Shown: positions 5,694 through 56,093 of the stretch, piece by piece
How positions within the stretch are numbered: the first letter of the stretch is position 1
Layout of the letters: each line of letters opens with the position of its first letter
IMG/VR virus record: IMGVR_UViG_3300025000_000053
Coordinates: 124,001 to 188,000 of that record
Direction: 5' to 3' (one strand)
Length of the DNA stretch: 64,000 nucleotides
Position numbers and translations under genes: made by a program
The notes under the pieces: model-generated
Told to the model about the DNA's origin: nothing
Database searches by the model: none
Seen by the model: the letters and a program-made list of their open reading frames with translations, nothing else

Positions 5694-7820
5694 CTATTTT
5701 TTATTATGTTTCAACGACATTTTAGGAATTGTTCGTAATTTATAATTTTTAACTGCTTCTTCCATAAAATAGTTATGAATATTAAATCCATTACTTACAT
5801 TATTCTTTAATAAAGAATATTTACCTTCTTTATTCATAACATATGTGTTTACATTATCTTTAAAATAATATGTTAATATGGATAAAGCTTTTATTTTTAT
5901 GTTTTCTTCTTCTAAAGGAATTAAAATTTCTACCCTTCTATCTAAATTCCTAGTAAGTAAATCAGCACTTGAAATATAAATACCACTATTATGAAAATAA
6001 TACATACGACTATGTTCTAGATATCTACCTATTACACTTCTAATAGTTATATTTTTATTAATAGGTTTCATAGAACAAATTCCTCTACAAATAATATTAA
6101 TCTTTACTCCATTTTCAGATGCAAAGTATAATTTCTTTATTATATCTTTGTCAGACAATGAATTTAATTTTAATGTAATACATGTTTTCTTTTTATTTTT
6201 AGCTTGTTTAATTTCATTATCTATCAACTGGTATATTTTATTCCTTAGATTATATGGAGCAAAATATAACTTATTAATATCTGTAGATGGTTCAGAAAAA
6301 CCTGATAATATATTAAATATATGAAGTAAGTCTTCACTTATTTTTTGATTAGAAGTGAAATAAGACAAATCTGTATAAATCTCAGATGTTTTGTCATTAT
6401 AATTACCTGTACCTAAATGAGAATATAATTTTAATCCTCCCTTATGAGTTCTTTTAACAACAACTATAAATTTACAATGAGTTTTTAATTCATCCATACC
6501 ATAAATTATTCTACAGCCAGCTAGTTTTAGTTTCTCTATTAAAGATATATTTCTATTTTCATCAAATCTAGCTTTTATTTCTAGTAAAACACTAACTTGT
6601 TTACCATTTATAGCTGCTTTACATAAAGCTTCAACTATAGGTGAATCTTTTGATGAAACTCTATATAAAGTTTGTTTAATAGCAACAACATTACTATCAA
6701 TAGAAGCATGTTCAATAAATTTTACTATTGGATCAAAACTTTCATATGGGTGATGTAATAAAATATCATTATTATCAATGGCTGTAAACATATCATGTTC
6801 ACCTATTAATTCTTGTGGATATTGAGAATTAAATTCATTATATTGTAAAATCTGATTTTTAATTGGCATAGATATAAGAAATGAATAATCCAATAAGTTA
6901 TCACTTTTAAATACATGACTTTTATTTAATTTAAACATTTTCATCAATATCTTTATTACTTGTTTAGATAAAGTATCTGTCACTTCCATAAATATAGGTT
7001 CACTATATTCTCTTAATAATAGAGAAGACTTCATTCTATCAACAAGATAAATATCTTTATCATGTTCAATTTCAATATTACCTTCTTTTAAAATTCTCAT
7101 GCATCCTTTATTTAAAATATTTTTATTAACAAATATTTTATTTAAAAATGTAAAAACAATATCCTCAAGGAATATATATTTATTTATTTCATCGTCAGTT
7201 TCAACTTTGTATAATCTTTCAAGATGTTCTATTGGTATTATAGAAATAACTTGAAGATTCTTATTATATTTATCCTCTAATGATACAATTATATTTAATT
7301 GTTTTGATTTAATAGGAGGGAATTCTTTAGTGGTATCATATGACATTGGAGTTAAAAGAGGGTAAATATTTTTATTAAATATATTCTCTATATATTCTCT
7401 TTCTTTCTTTGTTAAATTATCATACTTACAAATATGAATATTATTCTTATTGATAATTTTCAATAAATTTTTATAACTACTATTTTGTAATAACTTAAAT
7501 TCTTTAATTGATTCTAAAACCTTTTCATATTCTTCTTCATATGATAATCCAGATATATCATTATTCCTTTCATTAATAACATTATTAACTAGAGATGAAA
7601 ATCTAACCATAATAAATTCATCTAAATTACTAGAAGAAATGCCTAAAAATTTTAGTCTTTCTAATAAAGGTATTTCATCTCTAATACTTTGGTGTAAAAC
7701 CCTTTTATTAAAATCTAACCAACTTAATTCTCTATTGATATAAAAATGAGATTTATTAAAAGAATTAAATTGTTTTATTTCATTATTTAATAAGGTTGTA
7801 AAATTATCAGTTATAATCAA
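5694..7820 (-). CDS. ppk1: Polyphosphate kinase 1
   Basis: RELSWLDFNKRVL, ISSSNLDEFIMVR, HHPYESF, KQTLYR, KARFDE, LKTHCK (phospho-His), HLGTGNYN, RYLEHSR, SADLLTRNLDRRVE; full length, 708 aa. Confidence 0.95.
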   Translation of the reverse strand: MIITDNFTTLLNNEIKQFNSFNKSHFYINRELSWLDFNKRVLHQSIRDEIPLLERLKFLGISSSNLDEFIMVRFSSLVNNVINERNNDISGLSYEEEYEKVLESIKEFKLLQNSSYKNLLKIINKNNIHICKYDNLTKKEREYIENIFNKNIYPLLTPMSYDTTKEFPPIKSKQLNIIVSLEDKYNKNLQVISIIPIEHLERLYKVETDDEINKYIFLEDIVFTFLNKIFVNKNILNKGCMRILKEGNIEIEHDKDIYLVDRMKSSLLLREYSEPIFMEVTDTLSKQVIKILMKMFKLNKSHVFKSDNLLDYSFLISMPIKNQILQYNEFNSQYPQELIGEHDMFTAIDNNDILLHHPYESFDPIVKFIEHASIDSNVVAIKQTLYRVSSKDSPIVEALCKAAINGKQVSVLLEIKARFDENRNISLIEKLKLAGCRIIYGMDELKTHCKFIVVVKRTHKGGLKLYSHLGTGNYNDKTSEIYTDLSYFTSNQKISEDLLHIFNILSGFSEPSTDINKLYFAPYNLRNKIYQLIDNEIKQAKNKKKTCITLKLNSLSDKDIIKKLYFASENGVKINIICRGICSMKPINKNITIRSVIGRYLEHSRMYYFHNSGIYISSADLLTRNLDRRVEILIPLEEENIKIKALSILTYYFKDNVNTYVMNKEGKYSLLKNNVSNGFNIHNYFMEEAVKNYKLRTIPKMSLKHNKK

Positions 7821-35220: not shown

Positions 35221-35297
35221 TTTCCCTACCTCCTTTATTTTATATATTTCCTTACTAGAAGAAACGGGCTCTTCTAGTAAGGAAACTATCTTATCTT

Positions 35298-35963
35298 TTA
35301 TGAAGCTTCATCAATAATTTGTGGAAAAGTAAATCCTTTTATTTCAAGATAAATATATTTTTTCTCTAGAATACTCATATCAGGTTCAATAAGTTCTTTA
35401 GATATTTTAAACTTAGCTTCAAGTAATGATAATAAATCCTTAGATATAAATTTTTCATATTCTTCAATAAAAGATACAAAATTACCAAATAAATTTTGTA
35501 ATGGTATAAATAACTTACCATTATGAACTAATTCATGAACTGTAACACATAGTGGTATTAAACCAACTGTATTTCTATAATGAAGTAGTGTAACCTCTTC
35601 GGCTATTAATAATGGATTAATATCTTTTTCTTCATTAATCCATTTATCTAAAATTATTTGTGTTAAATCAAATAAGGTAAATGGTTCGTGATGAATTTCA
35701 ATAGAAACTCTTTTAGTATCCTTGTTATTAATATTATTAAAAAAAGAACATAAGGTCATATCAATTTCATCTCTTAGATATTGTACATATTGTTTATATT
35801 CCATTGAACTTCGAATTATTCTTTCTATAGTTTTTATAAGTTTAATTTTATCTTTCTCATTCATAATAATAACATTACGAGTTGATGTTGGTAATTCATT
35901 TATTTTTACATATTCAATTTTGTTATTATTTTCATAATTATCAACAACTTTAGGCATTCTCAT
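35298..35963 (-). CDS. His-rich protein (HNH/His-Me-like), paralogue of 27073-27723
   Basis: C...EIHHEPFTLFD...VHELVHNG; late promoter at 35991-36002. Confidence 0.5.
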   Translation of the reverse strand: MRMPKVVDNYENNNKIEYVKINELPTSTRNVIIMNEKDKIKLIKTIERIIRSSMEYKQYVQYLRDEIDMTLCSFFNNINNKDTKRVSIEIHHEPFTLFDLTQIILDKWINEEKDINPLLIAEEVTLLHYRNTVGLIPLCVTVHELVHNGKLFIPLQNLFGNFVSFIEEYEKFISKDLLSLLEAKFKISKELIEPDMSILEKKYIYLEIKGFTFPQIIDEAS

Positions 35964-36031
35964 TTTATCACCCTCATTTCATATTTTCTTTATTTAATTG
36001 TTAGAAAATAGTGAGAGAGTGATAAAAAATA

Positions 36032-36538
36032 TTAATAATGTCTTTCAATAAATTCCATTACCATTTTTTCTCTATCTAAATAGGTAAATTCACTTTCTTC
36101 TATCCCATAATCTTCTTCCATTATTATTTCTAGTATTCCTATAAATTTTTTAATAGCCTTTTTAACTTTATCCTTTTCATCATTACCAAAATTAAAAAAC
36201 TTAACAATCTCTTTTAAATCTTTAATTGAACTTTCTAAATCTATTAAAAATTGATGAAATGCCTCAGCAAATGCTTCTTCTTCATATTCAAAAACAGGTA
36301 TGTTATCATCAAAGCATATAAGATCATATGAAGAAAAATCATTTAATTGTTTAATACAAGATTTATGTAGTTTATTTTTTTTAATTTTTTTTACCTTATA
36401 ATGTTTTTTACCTCTTTTTTTTAAAAATAATTCTACCAGTTTTTCATCATTAGTAAAACCTAAAAACATTCCTGATTTTTTATTAAGAATAAAATATACA
36501 TACATGTTATCACTTCTTTTCCACTTTTGTTTTATCAT
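36032..36538 (-). CDS. Hypothetical protein
   Basis: 168 aa ORF (likely ATG start at MYVYF). Confidence 0.6.
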   Translation of the reverse strand: MIKQKWKRSDNMYVYFILNKKSGMFLGFTNDEKLVELFLKKRGKKHYKVKKIKKNKLHKSCIKQLNDFSSYDLICFDDNIPVFEYEEEAFAEAFHQFLIDLESSIKDLKEIVKFFNFGNDEKDKVKKAIKKFIGILEIIMEEDYGIEESEFTYLDREKMVMEFIERHY

Positions 36539-36746
36539 TTAAAACTTTCTTAACTTTTAAATATTTACTTATTTCTTTAATAGATTTACTTTTCTTCATA
36601 CCTTTAATATGTTTACTAATTATGTCATTAAGTTCTTTATCTTGAAATTCTTCATTAAAAAATTTAGTAAAATATTTAAATCTTTCATATACATCTTCAA
36701 CTTTATCAACAAATTCATCTATAATAATACTTTTATTATCAATCAT
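36510..36746 (-). CDS. Hypothetical protein
   Basis: 78 aa ORF with RBS. Confidence 0.55.
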   Translation of the reverse strand: MIDNKSIIIDEFVDKVEDVYERFKYFTKFFNEEFQDKELNDIISKHIKGMKKSKSIKEISKYLKVKKVLNDKTKVEKK

Positions 36747-36821
36747 AGGTCCTCATCTCCCATACTAAATATAATGAAGGTGTAAAGTATTTTTACTTTA
36801 CACCTTCATTATTTATAATTT

Positions 36822-37787: not shown

Positions 37788-37845
37788 TATTCAACATCTC
37801 CCTATAATTTATTTTTATCTTTATTTAAATAATATATAAATAAAA

Positions 37846-38549: not shown

Positions 38550-39884
38550 TTATATATTTTTAAATTTATTTTTCACTTCTTCTGATTTACCACATGTCAG
38601 ATTACCCTCTTTACATTTTCCTTTAACACATGGTGGTTCAGCCTCTTCAAATAATATCTTTGATATTTTCTTTAATTCAATAACTTTTTTAGTTGAATTT
38701 GTTCTTATTTCTGTTTGAGCCGTCATACATAACCTATCCTTTAACATCTCAACATCAGCCCTTGCATTATTACTTATAAAATATTTTATCATATCACAAT
38801 TTAATAATAATGGTAATACTGAAATGTAATTTTTATTTTTAATATATAATTCTAATCTAAATTTTTGTATTTCAGAAATTAAATTCATATATGAATCAAT
38901 AAAAATAGAGTTTTTAATTGATTCAGGAACATAAACTTCCCTATTTTCATTAATAATAATATCAGATAATTCTTCTCTTACTATAGTTGGAATTCTATGT
39001 CTTATTTGTTGATGATAGGATGCTAAACTACATGATAATATGAAAGAACTTCTACTATGTTCAGCTATACCTTTATGACCATAATCAAGAACTCTTTTTA
39101 TAAGTTTCTCTAATTCATCTTGATTGTCTTCATATTTATCAACATATGTTTCCGTTGGTGATTGTTGTGTGCTCGTAAGTGCTGCCAATCCAACATTTTT
39201 ATTATTATATAAATGATTTATATTTAATAATCTACATTCACCAATTTTATTTATACCATTAAATAAATGTAATTTAAGTGATTCAAATAAGCTATTATGT
39301 TTATAATTATCTTGTGTTTTCTTAAAAGTATCTACTGACAGTCCAAAACCAGATAAATATAATTTCTCTATTATTAAATTAATTAATTCATCATTAATAT
39401 AGGGGTATTCCCCTAAATAAAATAACATATCAATCAGTTTATCACCAGTTAATGAAACAGTAATATTTGTTTTAGTCGCTAAAGGTAAGATATATCGTGC
39501 ATCTTCAAATGTGATACCATGTTTAAAATCTTCTACTTTAGGTCTACCAACACAACCTTCTCTCAATTCACTCATTTGTGAATATAAGTTAAAACCTTTT
39601 TCTATTAAGTTATGGGCCTTTTCAGTATCTTCTCTCTCAAATTCTTTTATTTTATTATATGCATCTGAATTCATTTGAACATATCTTTGACTTTGTTGAA
39701 CATAAGAATCTTTACATTCACATATTAAAGTACTCTGAACTCTATTAATACCCTCCAATATAAAAAAAATATTTGTGAATTTTAATAAATCACGTAATTC
39801 ATTCACAGAGGGTTTAAGTTTACTATCCTGTATAAAATGTTTAATATTTAATAAACCACCAACAGATACAACACTAATTTCCAT
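38550..39884 (-). CDS. thyX: FAD-dependent thymidylate synthase, tandem-domain ThyX
   Basis: SYVQQSQRY and EDARYILP in the first half; HQQIRHR, R.C..AQ.EIR in the second. Confidence 0.8.
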   Translation of the reverse strand: MEISVVSVGGLLNIKHFIQDSKLKPSVNELRDLLKFTNIFFILEGINRVQSTLICECKDSYVQQSQRYVQMNSDAYNKIKEFEREDTEKAHNLIEKGFNLYSQMSELREGCVGRPKVEDFKHGITFEDARYILPLATKTNITVSLTGDKLIDMLFYLGEYPYINDELINLIIEKLYLSGFGLSVDTFKKTQDNYKHNSLFESLKLHLFNGINKIGECRLLNINHLYNNKNVGLAALTSTQQSPTETYVDKYEDNQDELEKLIKRVLDYGHKGIAEHSRSSFILSCSLASYHQQIRHRIPTIVREELSDIIINENREVYVPESIKNSIFIDSYMNLISEIQKFRLELYIKNKNYISVLPLLLNCDMIKYFISNNARADVEMLKDRLCMTAQTEIRTNSTKKVIELKKISKILFEEAEPPCVKGKCKEGNLTCGKSEEVKNKFKNI

Positions 39885-39924: not shown

Positions 39925-41295
39925 TTAGTTAATATTTCTTAAAATTGTAATAATTCTTTCTGCTTCAATTCTATCACTATTTTTTTCTTCTTCACTTAAA
40001 TTTTCATAGCAGGTATCTATTTGTCTAGCCCATCTTTCAACAAATTCTTGAGGTATAGTAAGTGATCCATTTTCATTTGTAATACACTTAGTAAATAAAT
40101 ATTCCATCCAACCTGACCACATTTGATGACATAAATCAGATAATGTTTCTTTTATTTTATATAAATTTTCTGTCATTTCATCAAAATTAATTTTATTAAC
40201 AATATTATTTTCTTTCATATCACCATTTAAAAATTTAATAATATTACTATAAATTTTACACTTTTCTAACTCTTTTAGTTGAAAAGAAATTTCTCTCTTT
40301 TCTTCTATTAATTTAATAATTCTTTCTCTTTCTTCTGTAGCACCCTTCTCTTTATTTAGTTGAGCCAATTGTTCTAATGTATCAATACGTTGTTTCTCAC
40401 ACCAATTAGGTTCTGAATCAGGCAAAAAGTCTATCATCCTTTTCATTTCCTCTATTTTTTCTTGTTCTAATTTAATTAAATCTTTAATTTGAATTAATTC
40501 AATACCTGTATCTTTTAATAAGTTAATAGCTTCAATATCATTATAAAGTTCATCATATATAACTCTTTTAATACCTTTATGAATAATCATTTTAGCACAT
40601 AAAAAACATGGTGAACAATTAACAAACAAGTCGGCATCACGTGCATTATCACCAGCTTTATCTAAAGCTTGAAATTCAGCATGTACTGAATTACAAATAT
40701 CTGCTCTAGTGCCAGAAGGTATATTTTCTTTTTTTCTTCTACATATATCTTTACAATTAATAGTGTAATTATAGGCTTCTGCAATAATCTCATTATTTTT
40801 TACAATAACACAACCAACTTTTCTACTTAAACATGTGGAATTTGTAGATAATTTATAACATTTTTCCATATATTCACTATATTTAAATTTTATTAGAGTA
40901 CTTTGTTTCCGATGTAAATAACAATCTAGTTCTTTTGGTTTATGAATACCAGCACAATCCATTTGATGTAACTGAAAACAATTTTCACATTCTTTATATA
41001 ATGAGGTGTCGTCTAAAAAACATTTTATTTTTATAGGACCATCAAAAATATCACCTTCTCTATTAACAAAAATTCCTATACATTGATGTGTTTTAAAAAA
41101 GTCACAATTATCACATTTTCCTGTTACAAAAAATGTTTTAGTAATTTCCATTTTTTTATCTTTCATACATTCAACTCCTTTAGATTTTTCATAAATAGAA
41201 CCATACTTATTAATATAAAAACCAAAACAAGGATAAGATTTATATCTACACCCCAAACATTTTTCTATTAAATTGTATTCTCTTATATCATCCAT
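39925..41295 (-). CDS. dCMP deaminase-family protein with a Cys-rich N-terminus and an RyR-like C-terminal domain
   Basis: CLSRKVGCVIV, HAE, PCFLC; multiple CxxC at the N-terminus; LSDLCHQMW...YENLSEEEKNSDR at the C-terminus. Confidence 0.8.
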   Translation of the reverse strand: MDDIREYNLIEKCLGCRYKSYPCFGFYINKYGSIYEKSKGVECMKDKKMEITKTFFVTGKCDNCDFFKTHQCIGIFVNREGDIFDGPIKIKCFLDDTSLYKECENCFQLHQMDCAGIHKPKELDCYLHRKQSTLIKFKYSEYMEKCYKLSTNSTCLSRKVGCVIVKNNEIIAEAYNYTINCKDICRRKKENIPSGTRADICNSVHAEFQALDKAGDNARDADLFVNCSPCFLCAKMIIHKGIKRVIYDELYNDIEAINLLKDTGIELIQIKDLIKLEQEKIEEMKRMIDFLPDSEPNWCEKQRIDTLEQLAQLNKEKGATEERERIIKLIEEKREISFQLKELEKCKIYSNIIKFLNGDMKENNIVNKINFDEMTENLYKIKETLSDLCHQMWSGWMEYLFTKCITNENGSLTIPQEFVERWARQIDTCYENLSEEEKNSDRIEAERIITILRNIN

Positions 41296-50181: not shown

Positions 50182-50408
50182 TTAATAATAAAACCTCCTT
50201 TTATTTAATATTTTTTTCTCTAATTAAAAGTTGTTGAACAAATAATTAATGACTAATTTTATTAAATTTTTCAGGAGGTTACTGATGACAAATGCCTGGA
50301 CATCTGCTCGGTAATAACAAACTTTTGACCTTAATTAATTCTAAAGATAATTTAGAATTTAAGGTTTCTTTTGTTACCACACTCGTAGAGTATTTTTATC
50401 TGTTCACC

Positions 50409-50420
50409 AACATCTTTATA
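50409..50420 (+). promoter_or_regulatory. Putative late promoter AACA-N6-TA (representative copy, upstream of RNAP beta)
   Basis: Also at 2430, 3534, 27016, 50237, 56171 (+) and 10279, 23260, 24242, 29922, 35991, 38536, 45935 (-); matches the AR9 late consensus as I recall it. Confidence 0.7.
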
Positions 50421-50456
50421 ATAAAAAAATTATAAGGAAAGGTTGGTGAACAGATT

Positions 50457-53400
50457 TTGATTTTTATTTCTGATATACCACATTTAAAAACCTATAAGCA
50501 AAAAGTTCTATTACCTAAAGATGAGAAGTATCCTAGTATTAATAGTGTAGTTTTTATTATTAATAATAACATACAATCATCTATAGGACTATTAAACCAT
50601 CAATTTATTAAGAATAATAACATGTATCATTTTTATTTTATGGATCACGTATATAACGGTAAATTATTTAATAGAACTTTTAGAGTTTTATATCGTAATG
50701 AAAGAAATGATATTTATAATAATATAGAAAAAGAAGTTCGATTCATACAAACAGTTCTAGATTTACATTCAGTAAATAAGAAAAATATATATGTTGATTT
50801 AATAAAACATAATAGTTTATTCTTTCAATTAAGTAAAAAAGTTAATTTTACAATTCGTATTAAAAATTATATAGATTATCTAGATAAGTTAATTAATGAT
50901 AGTCATTTTAATCAGTATAAGTATAAAACTATTTGTATTGATATTAATAGTTGGGTTAGTGATTTAAAGACTCAAATAAAAGGTAAATTAAATTTTGATA
51001 ATCCAATATTTATTATTTATTATTGTATGTATAAATACCTTGAAAAATTTAAAGAACTAGGGGATATTAATATTATTTTCTATACTAATGATAGTGTATT
51101 AAGATTAAATCCTTCATTATGTGATAAAAGCTCATATTCTTTATTTAAGAAAGAGATTATCAAAGCGTCTCCTAAAAGTTTATTAGATATGAGTGAAGAT
51201 AATATTGAAAAAGTACTAAAAAGAAAAGATGTTGCTGATAAAATAATAGGATATCTTAATGACCAACATAGATTTGTTGGTGATGATAAAACTGAAGAAG
51301 ATGAAAATTTTGAAACTAGTATTGAAGATAAAGTAGATGAAATAATTGATGCTAATAAGTTAGATAATAATAGTAATGATGAGATGTATAGTGAAGTTTC
51401 AAAAGTTATTATTAATGATGATGAAATTATAAAAAAAATTCATATGATGAATCAAGAGAATAAAGTTGGTAGAAGTACAGCTTCTATTAAAAGGGACGAA
51501 GAATTAAGAAAAAGACAAAAAGAGATAATAAAAGATAAAATAGGAATAGATAATATCTATGAAACTAATAAAGAACAACTAGATATTCCTAAATTTGATG
51601 TTACAGATAAAGTTAATACTACTAATAAAAATGTAACTACTATAAGATATCCTCAATTTGAAAAAGCTTATAATGAAGTTCTTCATGAAAAGGATTTACT
51701 TAATAATATAAAATTTTTAAATGAAAAATCTATTCCAGTTTATATTAGAGGTATAGAACGAGTTGATTCATCCGATGAATTAAATTTAAAAGAAACATAT
51801 ACTTTTGATTTAGAAGATGAAAATAGAGTTAGGCATAAATTAAAATTTGATATCCCTAAATTTATAGATGATAAATTTTTATATCTTGGTGGTAATAAAA
51901 AGATTATTATGAAGCAATTATTTATGAAGCCAGTGGTTAAGACTGGACCAGATGAAGTACAGATTTGTACTAATTACAATAAGATGTTTATTAGACGCTA
52001 TGGTAATAAAATATCATCTAAAATAGAAAAAATGAGAAAATTATTATATGAACAAAAAGAAGGTAAAGGTATTAAAGTTAAATATGGTAATAATTTATCT
52101 ATTAATAACAAATATGATACTACTATAGAATATGATGAATTATCTAAAAGCTTTACTTATATCCGTATAGGTAAAACTGAATTTTATTTTAATCAAGATG
52201 ATGCTACAAATATAGTTAAAGATAAAAAAATAAAACTTAATCAAAATGAATTCTTATTAGGTCTTATTGAAAATGGTAAAAATCCAATACCTATTACAAT
52301 TGATAAAAATACTCAAAAAATAGGCACATCTTTCGATATAGTTGACTATATACTTTCTATGTTGACACAAGGATTAGTGCAAGATTTTGATGATACTAAA
52401 AGTGGTAAGAAATTTGTTTACACTAGAGCTTATATAATGGAAAGACATGTTCCAGTAGTTTTGTTAATTTCATTCTTAGAAGGTTTATCTACAGTAATAA
52501 AAAAAGCTAATATTAAACATTATTTTTCAGATAAAAGACCTAAAGATATTACTCATAATGAGGGAATAATTCAATTTAGTGACGGGTATTTAATATATGA
52601 AAAATATCCATTTGAAAATTCTTTATTAATGAATGCATTTGCAGATATTCCAACTAAAACTTTCGAATATGGTGAATTTGATTCAAAAGATGTTTATTTA
52701 TCTTTATTTGATACTTTATATGGTAATAGGATAATTGGTAATGCCTTTCTTAACTCATATGAATTTTTAATTGATCCTATTACAAGAGAAGTATTAGAAG
52801 ATTTAAACTATCCAACAGATTATGTTTCTTTAGTTTTATATGCTAATTCTTTATTAGCAACTAATTCATATATTAAAGAAAATAATATGAATTTATATAG
52901 AATAAGATCAAATGAACTGGTTAATGCCTTATTATATAAAGAAGTTGCTAATGCTTATATTAAGTATAGAACTACTTCTTTAAATAATAATCCTGTTAAA
53001 ATTTCTGTACCACAAGATGTTATTATTAAAAAGATACTTGTTGCACAGACAGTCGAGGACTACAGCACATTAAATCCTATAACCGAAGTCGAGAAATCCC
53101 GTATGATCAGTCCAAAAGGACATTCAGGAATGAACCTGGATGAAGCGTATACACAAGATAAAAGAGCATATGATAAAACGATGCTTGGTATAATAGCTAT
53201 GTCAACTTCACCGGATTCATCGTGTGGAGTAACAAGACAACTTACATTAGAACCCAATATAAAAAATCCGAGGGGATATATCGATATAAATGACGATAGA
53301 TTAGAAATTTTAAAAGATGCAAATCTATTTTCTCCAGCTGAATTATTATCTCCTCTCGGAAATACAAGGGATGAACTTGCTATTGTCCCACTATGTAGAA

Positions 53401-56093
53401 ATATATAGTTAAAAACTCTTCTAATTGTCGGGGACATCCTTAACGCTCTTATTACCAAACTAATATAGTAATATATTAGTGGTGAAGGGTAATGCCTTAG
53501 GTATGGTAACAAGATAAGAGATTGGGTTATCCGCAGCTAAGATTCCTATAAATTTTATAGGAATAAAGTTCAAAGACTATCGAAAGCATGTTTATTATTG
53601 ATATAAAATATAATAAACAGAAGTGAGTAGAGTAGGGAAACCGAAACGGAGAGCATCTGAACACATAATGGTGAAGATGATGATATAGTCTGTCACTTAT
53701 GGAAATCATAGGTGGTTCCTGGATAGCATAAGAACAGCGATAAATAAAACTTGTCGCATTATCTAGTAATAGATAAATAAAAAATCTCCTTAATTGTCGG
53801 GAAATCTCTTAGAGCCTAAAACTACTAAGTTATATTAGTAATAATATAATGGCTTAGTCTAATCAACTAAGGTATAGTAATAAGGTTTTAGGATTGAGTA
53901 ATCCGCAGCTAAGATTCTAATATATTAGAATAAAGTTCAACGACTATCGAAGGCAAACTTATTATAGAAATAAAAATATAATGAGTTTGTTAGTAGAGTA
54001 GGGCTCAAGTGAGTTCTGAAATGGGAGACTCCTTATTATTTAATAATAAGGATGAAGATATAGTCTTATATCCTAAGGAAACTTAGGGAAGTTCATAAAA
54101 GAACTGCATAGATTAACGATCTATGTGAAATAAATGGAGTGTAAAACAATCGAAACATATCGTACCTGTAGTTAAACAATCACCAGTTTTATTATCTAAT
54201 GGAGTTGAACAAGTTATTCAATATCACTTATCTGATGATTTTTCAGTTGTAGCTAAAGATGATGGTGAAGTTGTTGAGATAGATAGTGAAACTGGTTTAA
54301 TTATTATTAAATATAAAAATGGTGAAACTAAAGTAATTGATACAAGTCCAAAAGTTGTAAAAAATGGTAAACTAAATGCCCACTTATATGGTGACATATA
54401 TGTGAATCTTCTTTAATTGTCGGGGAAACTCTTAGAACTTTTTATTATATAATAAAAAGATTGAGTAATCCGCAGCCAAGTCTCATAGTAAAAAAAATAA
54501 AGTTCATGAAGAACTCTATTACAAAGATATTGGAAAATTTTATAAAAAATCAAATACTCCATGGTATTTTATTGTATAACAAAGTTGATGATGAGTTGAT
54601 CTGAGTTCTTTTTTAATAATTTTAAAATCTATATCTATCAAATATTTCTCTAATAAGGGAAGTGTTTCTTCAATGAATATATTAAAAAGTTCTAAGTTCT
54701 TTTTAGCTATGAAAAAGTCACTAATTTTTTTGATATCATTATTATATCTTTTTAGTTCATTTTCATACCTCTGGGTAAAGAATTTTTTAGTTAATTCTAT
54801 CGATATAGGATTACAAAACTCATCACTTAACTCATTAATATTCCTCATTATAATATCTTTGTAATTAATTTCTCCTTGCTTCATTTTATTTATCATTCCT
54901 TTCTTTTTTATATTACGTAAATAATATATAAATGAAAAATAATGAAATACTATGAGAAAGGTTCAACGACTATCCCTTTGGCTTTGAAATAAGCAATAGG
55001 AGTAGGGCTCAAGTGAGTGGGTGAGAATCCCTTAAATCGAAATAGGAAGCATCCTTATGAGATGAAGATATAGTCTAGTATCTTATCGAAAGATAAGGAA
55101 GTTCATAAGAGAACTGCATAGATTAACGACCTATGTGAATATATATCGGCTGGTGGTTTCTTCTTATCAAATAAATTAACATGTAATTTGAAAGTAGGGC
55201 AAAAAATAAAAAAACGAGATATATTAGCTTATGACAGTAACTTTTTTAGTAATAGTAAATTATATGGTAATAGATTCAATATTGGTTCATTACAGAAAAT
55301 AGCGTGTATGTCCTCATACTCAACATATGAGGATTCTACTTTTGTCACTAAGAAATTATGTGAAGATATGGCAACTGAGATTGTTATGGAAAAACCAGTT
55401 GTCTTAGGTAAAAATGCTAATGTTGATTATATTGTTGAAATAGGTCAAAATGTTAGTGTTGGTGATGAACTAATTAGATTTGAAGTTTCTTTTAAAGATG
55501 AATCACTAAATAAATTTCTTTCAAATATTGGAGATGAATTAAAAGAAGAAATTAAAGCAATGGGTAAAACACCTATTAAAACTAAATACTCTGGTGTAAT
55601 TGAAGACATTAAAGTATATTCAACTGTAGATGTAGAAGAACTATCTCCAACATTAAAAAAAATTGTTAATAATTATTATGATAGAATTAATAAGAAGAAA
55701 AAAATTATTAATAAATATAATAAAAGTGATTCTGTATATAAATGTGGTATAATGTTAAATGAACCTGTAACTAAGATTGAAACTAAAGATGGTAAAGTTA
55801 AAAGTCATACTGTTAATTCAGGAGTTTTAATTATATTTTATATTAAATATAAAGATACAGTTGGTGTTGGTGATAAGATATGTTTCTTTACTGCTTTGAA
55901 ATCTATTGTCGGTGAAGTTATCCCTGAAGGATATGAACCATATTCTTTATTTAGACCAGATGAGAAGATTTCTTCAGTGGTTGCTCCAGGAGCAGTAATG
56001 AATAGAATGACCCCTTCTGTTATTCTATCAATGTTCGGTAATAAAGTATTGATAGAATTAAAACGAAAATTAAAAGATATTTATGATGAATAA
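50457..56093 (+). CDS. Phage RNA polymerase beta part, spliced from 4 exons (50457-53372, 53722-53741, 54137-54368, 55149-56093; ~1370 aa); probably the virion RNAP
   Basis: KGHSGMN, STSPDSSCGVTRQL, junctions NTRD|DSIRTAM|SVKQSKHIVP and VVKNG|AGGFFL, VGDK, NRMTPS; lacks the extreme beta C-terminus; late promoter at 50409-50420. Confidence 0.9.
53373..53721 (+). mobile_element. Group I intron 1 of RNAP beta (349 nt, no ORF)
   Basis: P1 GGGAU|GA:UUGUCCC; P10 GAUAGCA:UGCUAUU; AAUUGUCGGG, AUCCGCAGC, GUUCAAAGACUA, GAUAUAGUC; ends in G. Confidence 0.9.
53722..53741 (+). other. 20-nt micro-exon GATAGCATAAGAACAGCGAT
   Basis: Bounded by the terminal G of intron 1 and the P1 of intron 2; encodes DSIRTA plus AT of the Met codon. 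Confidence 0.85.
53742..54136 (+). mobile_element. Group I intron 2 of RNAP beta (395 nt, no ORF)
   Basis: P1 GCGAU|A:UGUCGC; AAUUGUCGGG, AAUCCGCAGC, GUUCAACGACUA, GAUAUAGUC; ends ...AAAUG. Confidence 0.9.
54369..55148 (+). mobile_element. Group I intron 3 of RNAP beta (780 nt) carrying an antisense ORF in the P6 loop
   Basis: P1 GGU|A:UGCC; same core motifs; stem TCTCATAGTA (54481-54490) : TACTATGAGA (54948-54957) encloses a ~460-nt insert; ends ...AUAUCG. Confidence 0.88.
54540..54896 (-). CDS. Orphan ORF antisense within intron 3
   Basis: 118 aa (114 aa from the second ATG); RBS-like AAGGA; early-type promoter at 54921-54930; no LAGLIDADG, GIY-YIG or HNH motif visible. Confidence 0.65.
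   Translation of the reverse strand: MINKMKQGEINYKDIIMRNINELSDEFCNPISIELTKKFFTQRYENELKRYNNDIKKISDFFIAKKNLELFNIFIEETLPLLEKYLIDIDFKIIKKELRSTHHQLCYTIKYHGVFDFL

What the first reader, a model, noticed from the sequence alone, without database searches (positions are those of the whole stretch)
35961..36027. Second RBS-occluding hairpin with the late promoter in its loop
Seen on the minus strand: UUUUAUCAC-UCUCUCAC-UAUUUUCU pairs with AGAAAAUA-UGAAAUGAGG-GUGAUAAAA, burying the RBS and the A of AUG 35963. AACA-ATTAAA-TA lies in the loop (36002-35991). The gene is downstream of an early-type operon with no terminator in between. Inference: same timing device as at RNAP beta, so it is a recurring design in this phage.
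Basis: partly seen in the sequence, partly recalled or inferred. Interest (0 to 1): 0.6.

Follow-up and report, generated by a model that had tools for sequence, protein, structure and literature searches.

The report
Hairpin restricts translation to late transcripts
In an uncultured giant phage related to Bacillus phage AR9, a 65-base RNA hairpin hides one gene's ribosome-binding site on long read-through transcripts, while a late promoter inside the hairpin loop starts a short, unfolded transcript; this design is well known from phage T4 but I found no description of it for this phage family.

Summary
On the minus strand, 36027-35963 folds into a 24-bp interrupted hairpin (-21.6 kcal/mol, z -5.7). 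It pairs the Shine-Dalgarno sequence and the A of ATG 35963. The 13-nt loop holds AACAATTAAATA, an exact match to the AR9 late-promoter consensus AACA-N6-T[A/G], whose last base is the start site.

The window comes from a 250-kb AR9/PBS1-like phage from groundwater. Both AR9 promoter motifs behave as promoters in this genome. The gene is the ortholog of AR9 g242, which is strictly late and has a mapped start site at the equivalent motif.

A transcript starting at 35991 is unstructured. Relatives keep the hairpin through compensatory changes. Distant orthologs have the same geometry built from unrelated arm sequences (15 of 32 orthologs versus 23 of 156 neighbouring genes).

The best explanation is a T4-type gate (as in gene e and I-TevI): only transcripts from the embedded late promoter are translated.

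- A strong hairpin with a weak U-tail (36812-36771) lies inside the upstream early operon.
- The design is rare in this genome: 3-4 of 58 late-promoter genes, no enrichment.
- The RNAP beta copy has no early operon upstream.

No expression data exist. This is a new member of a known kind.

The parts
36003..36027 (-). 5' arm of the hairpin (anti-Shine-Dalgarno strand). It is present only on transcripts that start upstream.
   Evidence: The arm sequence is unique in the genome.
35991..36002 (-). Late-promoter motif AACAATTAAATA (AR9 type, AACA-N6-TA). The predicted transcription start is A35991. It lies in the 13-nt loop 36002-35990.
   Evidence: It is invariant in the relatives L005 and L006 while the arms vary. 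The AR9 ortholog has a mapped start site at the same motif.
35963..35989 (-). 3' arm. It contains the Shine-Dalgarno GAGGGUGA (35975-35968) and the A of the start codon.
   Evidence: It is unpaired in the 35991-initiated leader (-1.1 kcal/mol).
35298..35963 (-). Regulated gene, 221 aa. It belongs to phrog_12252 and is the ortholog of AR9 g242 (47% identity). It may be an HNH-like nuclease, but that evidence is weak.
36032..36746 (-). Two small upstream genes (78 aa, and about 157-168 aa) with no promoter motif of their own. Transcripts that cross them carry both hairpin arms.
   Evidence: The same gene order is found in the relatives.
36771..36812 (-). Perfect 19-bp hairpin with tail AUUUAGUAU after the DHH phosphoesterase gene. 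It is a possible leaky terminator or processing site inside the early operon.
37829..37838 (-). Nearest upstream early-type promoter core TATATATTAT, 51 nt before the DHH gene. A terminator with a U-run (37871-37848) precedes it.
35246..35286 (-). 18-bp hairpin just after the gene's stop codon. It is the likely 3' end of the nested late transcription unit.
50398..50455 (+). Second instance, at the intron-split RNAP beta gene (TTG 50457). The motif AACATCTTTATA is at 50409-50420 and the predicted start is 50420, between the arms.

Best explanation
This is a translational gate that depends on which promoter made the transcript, of the kind known from phage T4. Transcripts that enter from upstream contain both arms. 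These are read-through from the early-type promoter at 37838 across the 78-aa and roughly 160-aa genes, or from any other upstream start. Their 24-bp hairpin sequesters the Shine-Dalgarno sequence and the first base of the AUG, so the 221-aa gene is poorly translated. The phage's non-virion RNA polymerase starts at A35991, inside the loop. That transcript has a 28-nt leader without the 5' arm, is unfolded, and is translated. The protein is therefore made only when the late polymerase is active, even though the gene sits inside an earlier transcription unit. Shown here: the structure, the motif, the open late leader, the conservation, and the late class of the AR9 ortholog. Inferred: that read-through RNA exists, that 35991 is used as a start site, and that the hairpin blocks ribosomes in vivo.
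For: Structure: -21.6 kcal/mol, z -5.74. The leader from 35991 folds at only -1.1 kcal/mol.

Promoter call: the AR9 late consensus is AACA-N6-T[A/G] with the last base as the start site. In this genome 49 of the 76 motifs that lie within 100 nt upstream of a same-strand gene start put that start site 20-39 nt before the ATG. Motif density is 3.4/kb in intergenic DNA versus 1.6/kb in coding DNA. In AR9, my motif-predicted start sites coincide with the mapped ones for g012, g145, g188 and g214.

Ortholog: AR9 g242 has FPKM 0 / 55 / 752 at 5 / 20 / 40 min and a mapped late start site with a 32-nt leader. It is divergent from its early neighbour and has no significant leader structure (z -0.7).

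Early operon: TATATATTAT occurs 57 times, 52 of them intergenic, and is oriented toward genes. One copy is at 37838.

Conservation: in relatives with 75-91% protein identity the loop motif is kept and the stems are kept by paired changes, for example CTCTC/GAGGG versus CTCCA/TGGAG and ATCAC/GTGAT versus AACAC/GTGTT. Each relative folds at -22.9 to -24.9 kcal/mol with z -6.0 to -7.5.

Convergent geometry: distant orthologs down to 37% identity (L013, L018, L026, L044) have unrelated arms, an NACA-N6-TA motif between the arms or at the end of the 5' arm, and the Shine-Dalgarno or start codon in the 3' arm.

Enrichment: 15 of 32 non-redundant orthologs versus 23 of 156 neighbouring genes have the ribosome-binding site paired to upstream bases (Fisher p 1.5e-4).

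RNA level: the sense-strand fold is more stable than the antisense fold in 18 of 21 cases.

Precedent: T4 gene e, I-TevI/II/III, segB, mobE and soc.
Against: There are no RNA or protein data for this uncultured phage.

A strong hairpin at 36812-36771 may stop much of the early transcription before it reaches the gene.

Genome-wide, occlusion is not enriched among genes with a late-promoter motif: mean 0.36 versus 0.31, p 0.05; strong cases 3 of 58 versus 6 of 221; and 3 of the 7 strongest occluding hairpins carry the motif.

The expected link between lack of an upstream terminator and presence of occlusion is only a trend (13 of 24 versus 2 of 8, p 0.2).

Some orthologs (L010) and AR9 g188 have the promoter inside a hairpin whose 3' arm stops short of the Shine-Dalgarno sequence.

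The upstream stop codon is only 4 nt from the stem base, so terminating ribosomes may open part of the stem.

The orthologs are phylogenetically related, so the Fisher test overstates independence. The sense/antisense test used hairpin limits chosen on the sense strand.
Confidence: 0.6

Rival explanations
1. The hairpin is mainly a transcription terminator or insulator for incoming transcription, with the late promoter nested in its loop. Long transcripts end or are processed at the hairpin. Transcripts started in the loop carry only the 3' arm and pass through. Covering the ribosome-binding site would be secondary. This can coexist with the best explanation.
For: AR9 g188 has a mapped late start site in the loop of a perfect 17-bp hairpin (z -4.9) that ends before the Shine-Dalgarno sequence. 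L010 is similar. Two other long hairpins without U-runs bracket this region (36812-36771 and 35286-35246), so hairpins without U-tracts may act on the phage polymerases. The RNAP beta copy has no early operon upstream.
Against: No U-run follows the 3' arm; the next bases are AAAAUG. The clear terminators in this genome have 7-9 U and tight loops. This hairpin has a 13-nt loop and internal loops. In most orthologs the 3' arm specifically covers the Shine-Dalgarno or start codon.
Confidence: 0.12
2. The element is a translational coupling device. On polycistronic RNA the hairpin keeps the gene silent unless ribosomes finishing the upstream ORF, whose stop is 4 nt from the stem, melt the stem. 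The gene's translation is thus tied to the upstream gene rather than blocked.
For: The stop codon 36034-36032 lies 4 nt from the first paired base. Spacing is similar in L005, L006 and L053. In L013 the 5' arm may lie inside the upstream reading frame.
Against: A terminating ribosome would reach only about 6 A-U pairs at the stem base. The 7 pairs that hold the Shine-Dalgarno sequence and the two inner helices would stay closed; this is my inference from the geometry. Coupling does not explain an invariant promoter in the loop. The AR9 ortholog is late-only.
Confidence: 0.08
3. The effect is at the DNA level. The inverted repeat extrudes as a hairpin or cruciform and presents the template-strand promoter as single-stranded DNA to the non-virion polymerase, which recognises its promoter in single-stranded form. 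This would boost or license the late promoter.
For: The AR9 non-virion polymerase recognises the template strand and starts specifically on single-stranded DNA. The template strand folds as DNA at -11.4 kcal/mol, z -4.2, with the whole motif in the loop. AR9 g188 has a mapped start site in a perfect inverted repeat.
Against: The motif's position relative to the stems varies: it is in the loop here, partly in a stem at RNAP beta and in L053, and in the 5' arm in L012 and L038. The constant feature is the ribosome-binding site in the 3' arm. Sense RNA is more stable than antisense in 18 of 21 cases, with more G-U pairs. 54 or more of the 58 candidate late promoters have no such repeat.
Confidence: 0.07
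4. The inverted repeat is an operator for a dimeric DNA-binding protein that overlaps the promoter, perhaps the gene's own product, as with I-TevI autorepression.
For: I-TevI binds an operator overlapping its own late promoter. The product may be nuclease-like.
Against: The arm sequences change freely between orthologs whose proteins are 75-91% identical, and they change in a pairing-preserving way. The arms occur nowhere else in the genome. The stems are interrupted and their spacing varies.
Confidence: 0.04

Closest known systems
Phage T4 gene e (lysozyme) leader
   Same: Long early transcripts form a hairpin that sequesters the ribosome-binding site. Late promoters lie in the DNA that encodes the 5' strand of that structure, so late transcripts lack it and are translated (PMC3014915).
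   Different: T4 uses host RNA polymerase with the gp55 late sigma factor and a TATAAATA promoter. Here the motif is the AR9-type AACA-N6-TA, read by a phage-encoded multisubunit polymerase on the template strand. The regulated gene is not a lysis gene. The T4 case is proven by experiment; this one is not.
T4-family homing endonuclease genes I-TevI, I-TevII, I-TevIII, segB and mobE (Aeh1)
   Same: These are late genes embedded in earlier transcription units. A stable hairpin hides the ribosome-binding site and a late promoter is placed so that late transcripts cannot form it (PMC2988022). The product here may also be an HNH-like nuclease (weak evidence).
   Different: The gene here is a conserved core gene of AR9-like phages (283 homologs). 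It is not a mobile intron-borne or free-standing endonuclease. No autorepression operator is evident.
AR9 late transcription units nested in early operons (Lavysh et al. 2017, PMC5312081)
   Same: The phage family, the early and late promoter motifs, and the arrangement of a late promoter inside an early operon are the same.
   Different: In AR9 such genes are described as continuously expressed at the RNA level, and no translational filter was described. The paper's text contains no occurrence of 'hairpin' and leaves the 5' UTR motifs unexplained. The hairpin here would turn continuous RNA into late-only protein.
Phage N4 virion RNA polymerase hairpin promoters
   Same: A promoter is associated with an inverted repeat, and the polymerase reads single-stranded features. 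This comparison rests on my general knowledge and is the lead for the DNA-level rival.
   Different: N4 promoters are short DNA hairpins (5-7 bp stem, 3-nt loop) that are themselves the recognition element. Here the recognition motif is a linear sequence that works at more than 50 other sites without any repeat.
Intrinsic (rho-independent) terminators
   Same: Both are stable stem-loops at the end of an upstream gene.
   Different: This element has no U-tract, a large loop and internal loops, and its 3' arm is the next gene's ribosome-binding site.

Membership tests
T4-type RBS-sequestering hairpin with embedded late promoter | A stable RNA helix pairs the Shine-Dalgarno sequence and/or start codon with upstream leader sequence. 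| tested here: met
   24 bp, -21.6 kcal/mol, z -5.74; Shine-Dalgarno and A of AUG paired.
T4-type RBS-sequestering hairpin with embedded late promoter | A late promoter is placed so that its start site lies downstream of the 5' strand of the helix. | tested here: inconclusive
   There is an exact match to the AR9 late consensus in the loop, with predicted start 35991. The motif behaves as a promoter genome-wide, and the ortholog's start site is mapped in AR9. No start site has been mapped in this phage.
T4-type RBS-sequestering hairpin with embedded late promoter | The late transcript cannot form the inhibitory structure. | tested here: met
   The leader from 35991 folds at -1.1 kcal/mol, z -0.05.
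T4-type RBS-sequestering hairpin with embedded late promoter | Longer transcripts from earlier promoters run into the gene. | tested here: inconclusive
   An early-type promoter lies at 37838 and the two genes directly upstream have no promoter motif. However, a strong hairpin with a weak U-tail at 36812-36771 may attenuate transcription.
T4-type RBS-sequestering hairpin with embedded late promoter | Translation from long transcripts is repressed and is relieved on late transcripts. | not testable with these tools
   This needs toeprinting, reporter fusions or ribosome profiling.
T4-type RBS-sequestering hairpin with embedded late promoter | The structure is conserved in relatives through pairing-preserving changes. 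| tested here: met
   (close relatives; 6 pairs with changes on both sides). (distant orthologs with unrelated arms).
Intrinsic terminator | A G+C-rich stem with a tight loop is followed directly by a U-tract. | tested here: not met
   The tail is AAAAUGAGAAUG on the minus strand and there is no T-run on the plus strand. The terminator scan did not report it.
AR9-type late promoter (non-virion RNAP) | The sequence AACA-N6-T[A/G] lies about 20-40 nt upstream of a gene start. | tested here: met
   AACAATTAAATA, with the start site 28 nt before the ATG.
AR9-type late promoter (non-virion RNAP) | Deoxyuridine at template positions -11 and -10, and recognition by a gp226-type subunit. | not tested
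   The base composition of the virion DNA is unknown. The window encodes a ThyX-domain protein, so uracil DNA cannot be assumed.

The most novel reading that the evidence does not exclude
The inverted repeat works on both DNA and RNA. Extruded as a hairpin in A+T-rich, replicating or supercoiled phage DNA, it presents the template-strand promoter to the non-virion polymerase as single-stranded DNA, a form that enzyme is known to use. This would license a subset of late promoters. The RNA copy of the same repeat silences read-through transcripts.
Probability: 0.07. Interest if true: 0.75.

Novelty: new member of a known kind. Interest (0 to 1): 0.4.

Why it matters
The finding extends a classic T4 post-transcriptional device to the AR9/PBS1-like jumbo phages. 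These phages transcribe with their own two multisubunit polymerases and use a quite different late promoter. In AR9, a late promoter nested in an early operon has been read as 'continuous expression'. This element suggests that some such genes are late-only at the protein level. It also singles out one conserved gene family of unknown function (phrog_12252 / AR9 g242). Many lineages have independently kept or rebuilt the gate at this gene, which implies that early synthesis of the product is harmful, and a weak structural lead points to an HNH-like nuclease. The hypothesis can be tested in AR9-family phages that can be grown.

Tried and rejected
- Megablast of the region against cultured phage genomes found no match. 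Relatives were reached only through protein searches.
- The RNA-run search listed only three tiny metatranscriptomes holding none of the sampled words. Read laying was therefore not used, and no expression evidence could be obtained.
- Genome-wide test of a 'recurring design': occlusion of the ribosome-binding site by sequence upstream of the predicted start is not enriched at late-promoter genes. The same holds in AR9, where 6 of 77 candidates score above 0.7. I rejected the idea that this is a general rule of late genes.
- Association between lack of an upstream terminator and presence of occlusion among orthologs goes in the expected direction but is not significant.
- Protein function: Pfam gave only a sub-threshold DUF3091 hit. 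A PDB profile search found nothing and Foldseek found nothing. The HNH-like reading rests only on VIA-align Z 5.5 and 4.1 and on language-model look-alikes. I present it as a lead, not a finding.
- Dispersed repeat or operator family: the arms occur once in the genome.
- AR9 homologs of the upstream genes, sought in order to transfer an expression class, were not found.
- A formal covariation count on a hand-registered alignment was not possible. The MAFFT alignment is out of register at indels, so only the RNAalifold counts and direct reading of single folds are given.

Full report
WHERE THE WINDOW COMES FROM. The window is bases 124001-188000 of a 249,853-bp virus record from IMG/VR. It has about 23% G+C. 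The best DNA-holding samples are groundwater metagenomes. Nucleotide search against cultured phages finds nothing. The protein next to the finding has its closest cultured relatives in Bacillus phages AR9 and PBS1 (47% identity), Staphylococcus jumbo phages and Yersinia phiR1-37. The window also carries an intron-split RNA polymerase beta gene. It is therefore an uncultured AR9-like jumbo phage.

THE OBSERVATION. Read on the minus strand, the spacer between the stop codon of the upstream ORF (36034-36032) and ATG 35963 is almost entirely one stem-loop.
- The 5' arm is 36027-36003, the loop is 36002-35990 and the 3' arm is 35989-35963.
- The predicted fold has 13 + 3 + 8 base pairs at -21.6 kcal/mol. 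Shuffles average -8.2 (z -5.74, none of 200 as stable).
- The Shine-Dalgarno GAGGGUGA and the A of the AUG are paired.
- The loop holds AACAATTAAATA.
- ATG 35963 is the start codon, because all orthologs begin M-R-x-P at that position.

IS THE LOOP MOTIF A PROMOTER? In AR9, 94 of 118 mapped late start sites follow AACA-N6-T[A/G], with the last base as the start. Early promoters follow AAATATATATTAT-N6-G. Both motifs behave as promoters in this genome.
- TATATATTAT occurs 57 times. 52 copies lie in the 11% of the genome that is intergenic, and each points at a gene start 33-350 nt away.
- Of the 76 late motifs within 100 nt upstream of a same-strand gene start, 49 put the predicted start 20-39 nt before the ATG. 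Intergenic density is twice the coding density.
- The motif is under-represented in the window as a whole: 69 found versus 104 expected.
- As a check of the method, the start sites I predicted from the motif in the AR9 genome coincide with the published mapped sites for g012, g145, g188 and g214.
For the target, the predicted start is A35991, which gives a 28-nt leader.

THE GENE AND ITS AR9 ORTHOLOG. The 221-aa product belongs to phrog_12252, of unknown function. Its AR9 ortholog is g242. In the AR9 transcriptome g242 is strictly late: FPKM 0, 55 and 752 at 5, 20 and 40 min. It has a mapped late start 32 nt before its ATG, at an AACA-N6-TA motif. AR9 g242 is divergent from its early neighbour (RNase H, g241), so it cannot receive early read-through, and its leader has no significant structure (z -0.7). 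In the window the same gene lies co-directionally inside a long leftward gene array, and that is where the hairpin appears.

WHAT EACH TRANSCRIPT LOOKS LIKE. RNA starting at 35991 folds at only -1.1 kcal/mol, no better than shuffles, so its ribosome-binding site is open. Any RNA coming from upstream contains both arms.

The nearest upstream early-type promoter is at 37838-37829, directly after a terminator with a U-run (37871-37848). It drives a DHH phosphoesterase gene. A perfect 19-bp hairpin follows (36812-36771, -26 kcal/mol) whose tail is only AUUUAGUAU. Two small genes with no promoter motif of their own come next. Those two genes can only be transcribed by polymerases that pass that hairpin, so some read-through toward the target is likely, but it may be attenuated. 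'No terminator in between' is therefore only partly right.

A further 18-bp hairpin (35286-35246) follows the target's stop codon. The gene thus looks like a late single-gene unit nested in an earlier operon, an arrangement described for AR9.

CONSERVATION. The protein has 283 homologs in metagenomes. I fetched 48 loci from IMG/VR and several from other assemblies.
- In relatives with 90-91% protein identity, the loop block AACAATTAAATAAAGAA is invariant while the arms differ, and the differences preserve pairing. The outer stem is CTCTC/GAGGG in the window and CTCCA/TGGAG in L005. The inner stem is TATTTTCT/AGAAAATA versus TATTCTTT/AAAGAATA.
- A relative at 75% identity (L053) has ATCAC/GTGAT changed to AACAC/GTGTT.
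- RNAalifold on the four distinct sequences finds 6 pairs with changes on both sides, even though the alignment is out of register at indels.
- Folded singly, the three relatives give -24.9, -22.9 and -22.9 kcal/mol, with z -6.9, -6.0 and -7.5.
- More distant orthologs have unrelated arm sequences but the same geometry. L013 has z -3.9, L018 and L026 have z -4.0 and -3.4, and L044 (37% identity) folds at -36.3 kcal/mol with z -6.5. Weaker versions occur in L008, L012 and L038. In those clades the motif between the arms reads GACA- or CACA-N6-TA.
- Over 32 non-redundant orthologs, 15 have the Shine-Dalgarno/AUG segment paired (probability > 0.6) to bases at least 25 nt upstream. Only 23 of 156 neighbouring genes in the same loci do (Fisher p 1.5e-4, rank test p 0.003). 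These lineages are related, so the p-values are optimistic, but the arms are not homologous in sequence.
- The arms of the window's hairpin occur nowhere else in the genome.

RNA OR DNA? The AR9 non-virion polymerase recognises the template strand and can start on single-stranded DNA. A DNA hairpin that exposes the promoter is therefore a real alternative. The template strand does fold as DNA (-11.4 kcal/mol, z -4.2). Three observations favour RNA.
- The motif's place relative to the helices varies among orthologs and at RNAP beta, whereas the ribosome-binding site is always in the 3' arm.
- The sense-strand fold is more stable than the antisense fold in 18 of 21 cases and has more G-U pairs. 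The caveat is that the hairpin limits were chosen on the sense fold.
- More than 50 candidate late promoters in this genome have no such repeat.

IS IT A RECURRING DESIGN? The 983-aa ORF at 50457 is the N-terminal part of an RNA polymerase beta subunit. Its start region lies in a hairpin at 50398-50455 (-32.3 kcal/mol, z -8.2). The motif AACATCTTTATA and the predicted start 50420 lie between the arms, and the leader from 50420 is open. A relative keeps the hairpin with one U-A to C-G exchange.

However, the gene upstream of it is divergent and there is no early motif upstream. A second late-type motif (start 50248) and a 9-codon mini-ORF lie in the spacer. The 'early versus late' logic therefore does not explain that copy.

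Genome-wide, only 3-4 of 58 genes with a late motif show the design. Occlusion is not enriched among them (0.36 versus 0.31, p 0.05; strong cases 3 of 58 versus 6 of 221; 3 of the 7 strongest occluding hairpins carry the motif). AR9 is similar.
- Its homing-endonuclease gene g188 has a mapped late start in the loop of a perfect 17-bp hairpin (z -4.9) that stops short of the Shine-Dalgarno sequence.
- Its virion-polymerase genes g145 and g189 have only weak versions.
These AR9 cases show that the polymerase does start inside inverted repeats in vivo. They also show that such hairpins need not cover the ribosome-binding site, which keeps a terminator or insulator role in play.

MECHANISM AND RIVALS. 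The best-supported reading (about 0.6) is the T4-type gate: only transcripts born at the embedded late promoter are translated. It is better described as gating by promoter of origin than as a clock, because read-through from upstream late promoters would also be silenced. The rivals are:
- a terminator or insulator with a nested promoter (0.12; it can coexist with the best reading);
- translational coupling to the upstream ORF, whose stop codon is 4 nt from the stem (0.08);
- presentation of the promoter as single-stranded DNA (0.07);
- a protein operator (0.04).
The remaining probability is for no function.

COMPARISON WITH WHAT IS KNOWN. The device matches T4 gene e, where long early RNAs fold over the ribosome-binding site and late promoters inside the structure give open RNAs. 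It also matches the T4-family endonuclease genes I-TevI/II/III, segB and mobE, and soc. The differences are the transcription machinery (a phage-encoded multisubunit polymerase and a template-strand AACA-N6-TA promoter) and the phage family. Full-text searches found no description of such a gate in AR9-like or other jumbo phages. The AR9 transcriptome paper contains no occurrence of 'hairpin' in its text and leaves its 5' UTR motifs unexplained.

WHAT THE PROTEIN MIGHT BE. Sequence methods give nothing. An AlphaFold model (mean pLDDT 70.5) has no Foldseek match. With VIA-align its best match is the phage GVE2 HNH endonuclease (Z 5.5, rmsd 3.3, 82 residues), with T5 SciA, Vibrio endonuclease I and McrA lower in the list. 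Language-model look-alikes include HNH and T5 nicking-endonuclease clusters (0.94 and 0.91). Invariant residues include an E-x-H-H-E-P-F strand and two histidines in a following helix. This is a lead only, since Z is below 8. It would fit the T4 pattern, in which nucleases are the genes kept silent until late.

VERDICT. This is a new member of a known kind and of moderate interest.

Noticed in passing
window 53368-53713 and 53732-54088 (+); also about 54940-55185: Two adjacent group I introns (Rfam RF00028, 61 and 60 bits) interrupt the RNA polymerase beta gene between the 983-aa part (50457-53408) and the 301-aa part (55188-56093). A third structured stretch just before 55188 resembles sequences seen at genome positions about 51,660 and 73,040, and may be another intron 3' half.
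   Followed up: partly
whole genome; in the window for example 37838, 33521, 47590, 49488, 54930 (-): The AR9 early-promoter core TATATATTAT occurs 57 times, 52 of them intergenic, always pointing at a gene 33-350 nt downstream. In about ten cases a terminator hairpin, a U-run ending in [A/C]GTAT and about 17 nt precede it, forming a composite terminator-promoter module.
   Followed up: partly
window 36771-36812 and 35246-35286 (-): Two perfect 18-19-bp hairpins with 4-5-nt loops and no real U-tract (z -7.2 and -7.6) bracket the region. They could be terminators for the phage polymerases, RNase III sites or 3'-end stabilisers.
   Followed up: partly
window 38550-39884 and 39925-41295 (-): A 444-aa protein with a ThyX (Thy1) domain and a 456-aa protein with a dCMP deaminase domain lie next to each other. 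A thymidylate synthase is unexpected if this phage has uracil DNA like AR9 and PBS1, on which the AR9 late polymerase depends.
   Followed up: no
window 5694-7820 (-): A full-length polyphosphate kinase 1 (all four PPK domains, E 1e-67 to 1e-29) is encoded by the phage.
   Followed up: no
window 50237-50313 (+): Upstream of the RNAP beta hairpin lies a second late-type motif (AACAAATAATTA, predicted start 50248). It is followed by a strong AGGAGG and a 9-codon mini-ORF (50286-50315), which may be a leader peptide.
   Followed up: no
window 56221 to beyond 64000 (+): A giant ORF of about 3,288 codons starts here and runs past the end of the window.
   Followed up: no
window, both strands: AACA-N6-TA is under-represented in the window as a whole (69 found, 104 +/- 10 expected; all 100 shuffles have more). 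It is enriched upstream of genes. This is consistent with selection against stray late promoters.
   Followed up: partly
L044, L038, L040, L041, L045 (GACA) and L028, L034 (CACA), upstream of the orthologous gene: In more distant clades of this phage group the presumed late motif in front of the ortholog reads GACA-N6-TA or CACA-N6-TA instead of AACA-N6-TA. This hints at clade-specific changes at position -11 of the promoter.
   Followed up: no
AR9 (KU878088.1) about 149,060-149,150 (-), locus L067 9062-9150: The mapped late start of AR9 g188 (a Hef-like homing endonuclease next to the RNAP beta gene g189) lies in the loop of a perfect 17-bp hairpin (z -4.9). This parallels the regulation of T4 intron endonucleases.
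   Followed up: partly
L056 738-1394: The ortholog on this short groundwater contig has one in-frame TAG where relatives have GAG. The source called the gene with TAG read as Q. This is most likely an assembly error or a pseudogene. The window's own genes are open under the standard bacterial code.
   Followed up: partly
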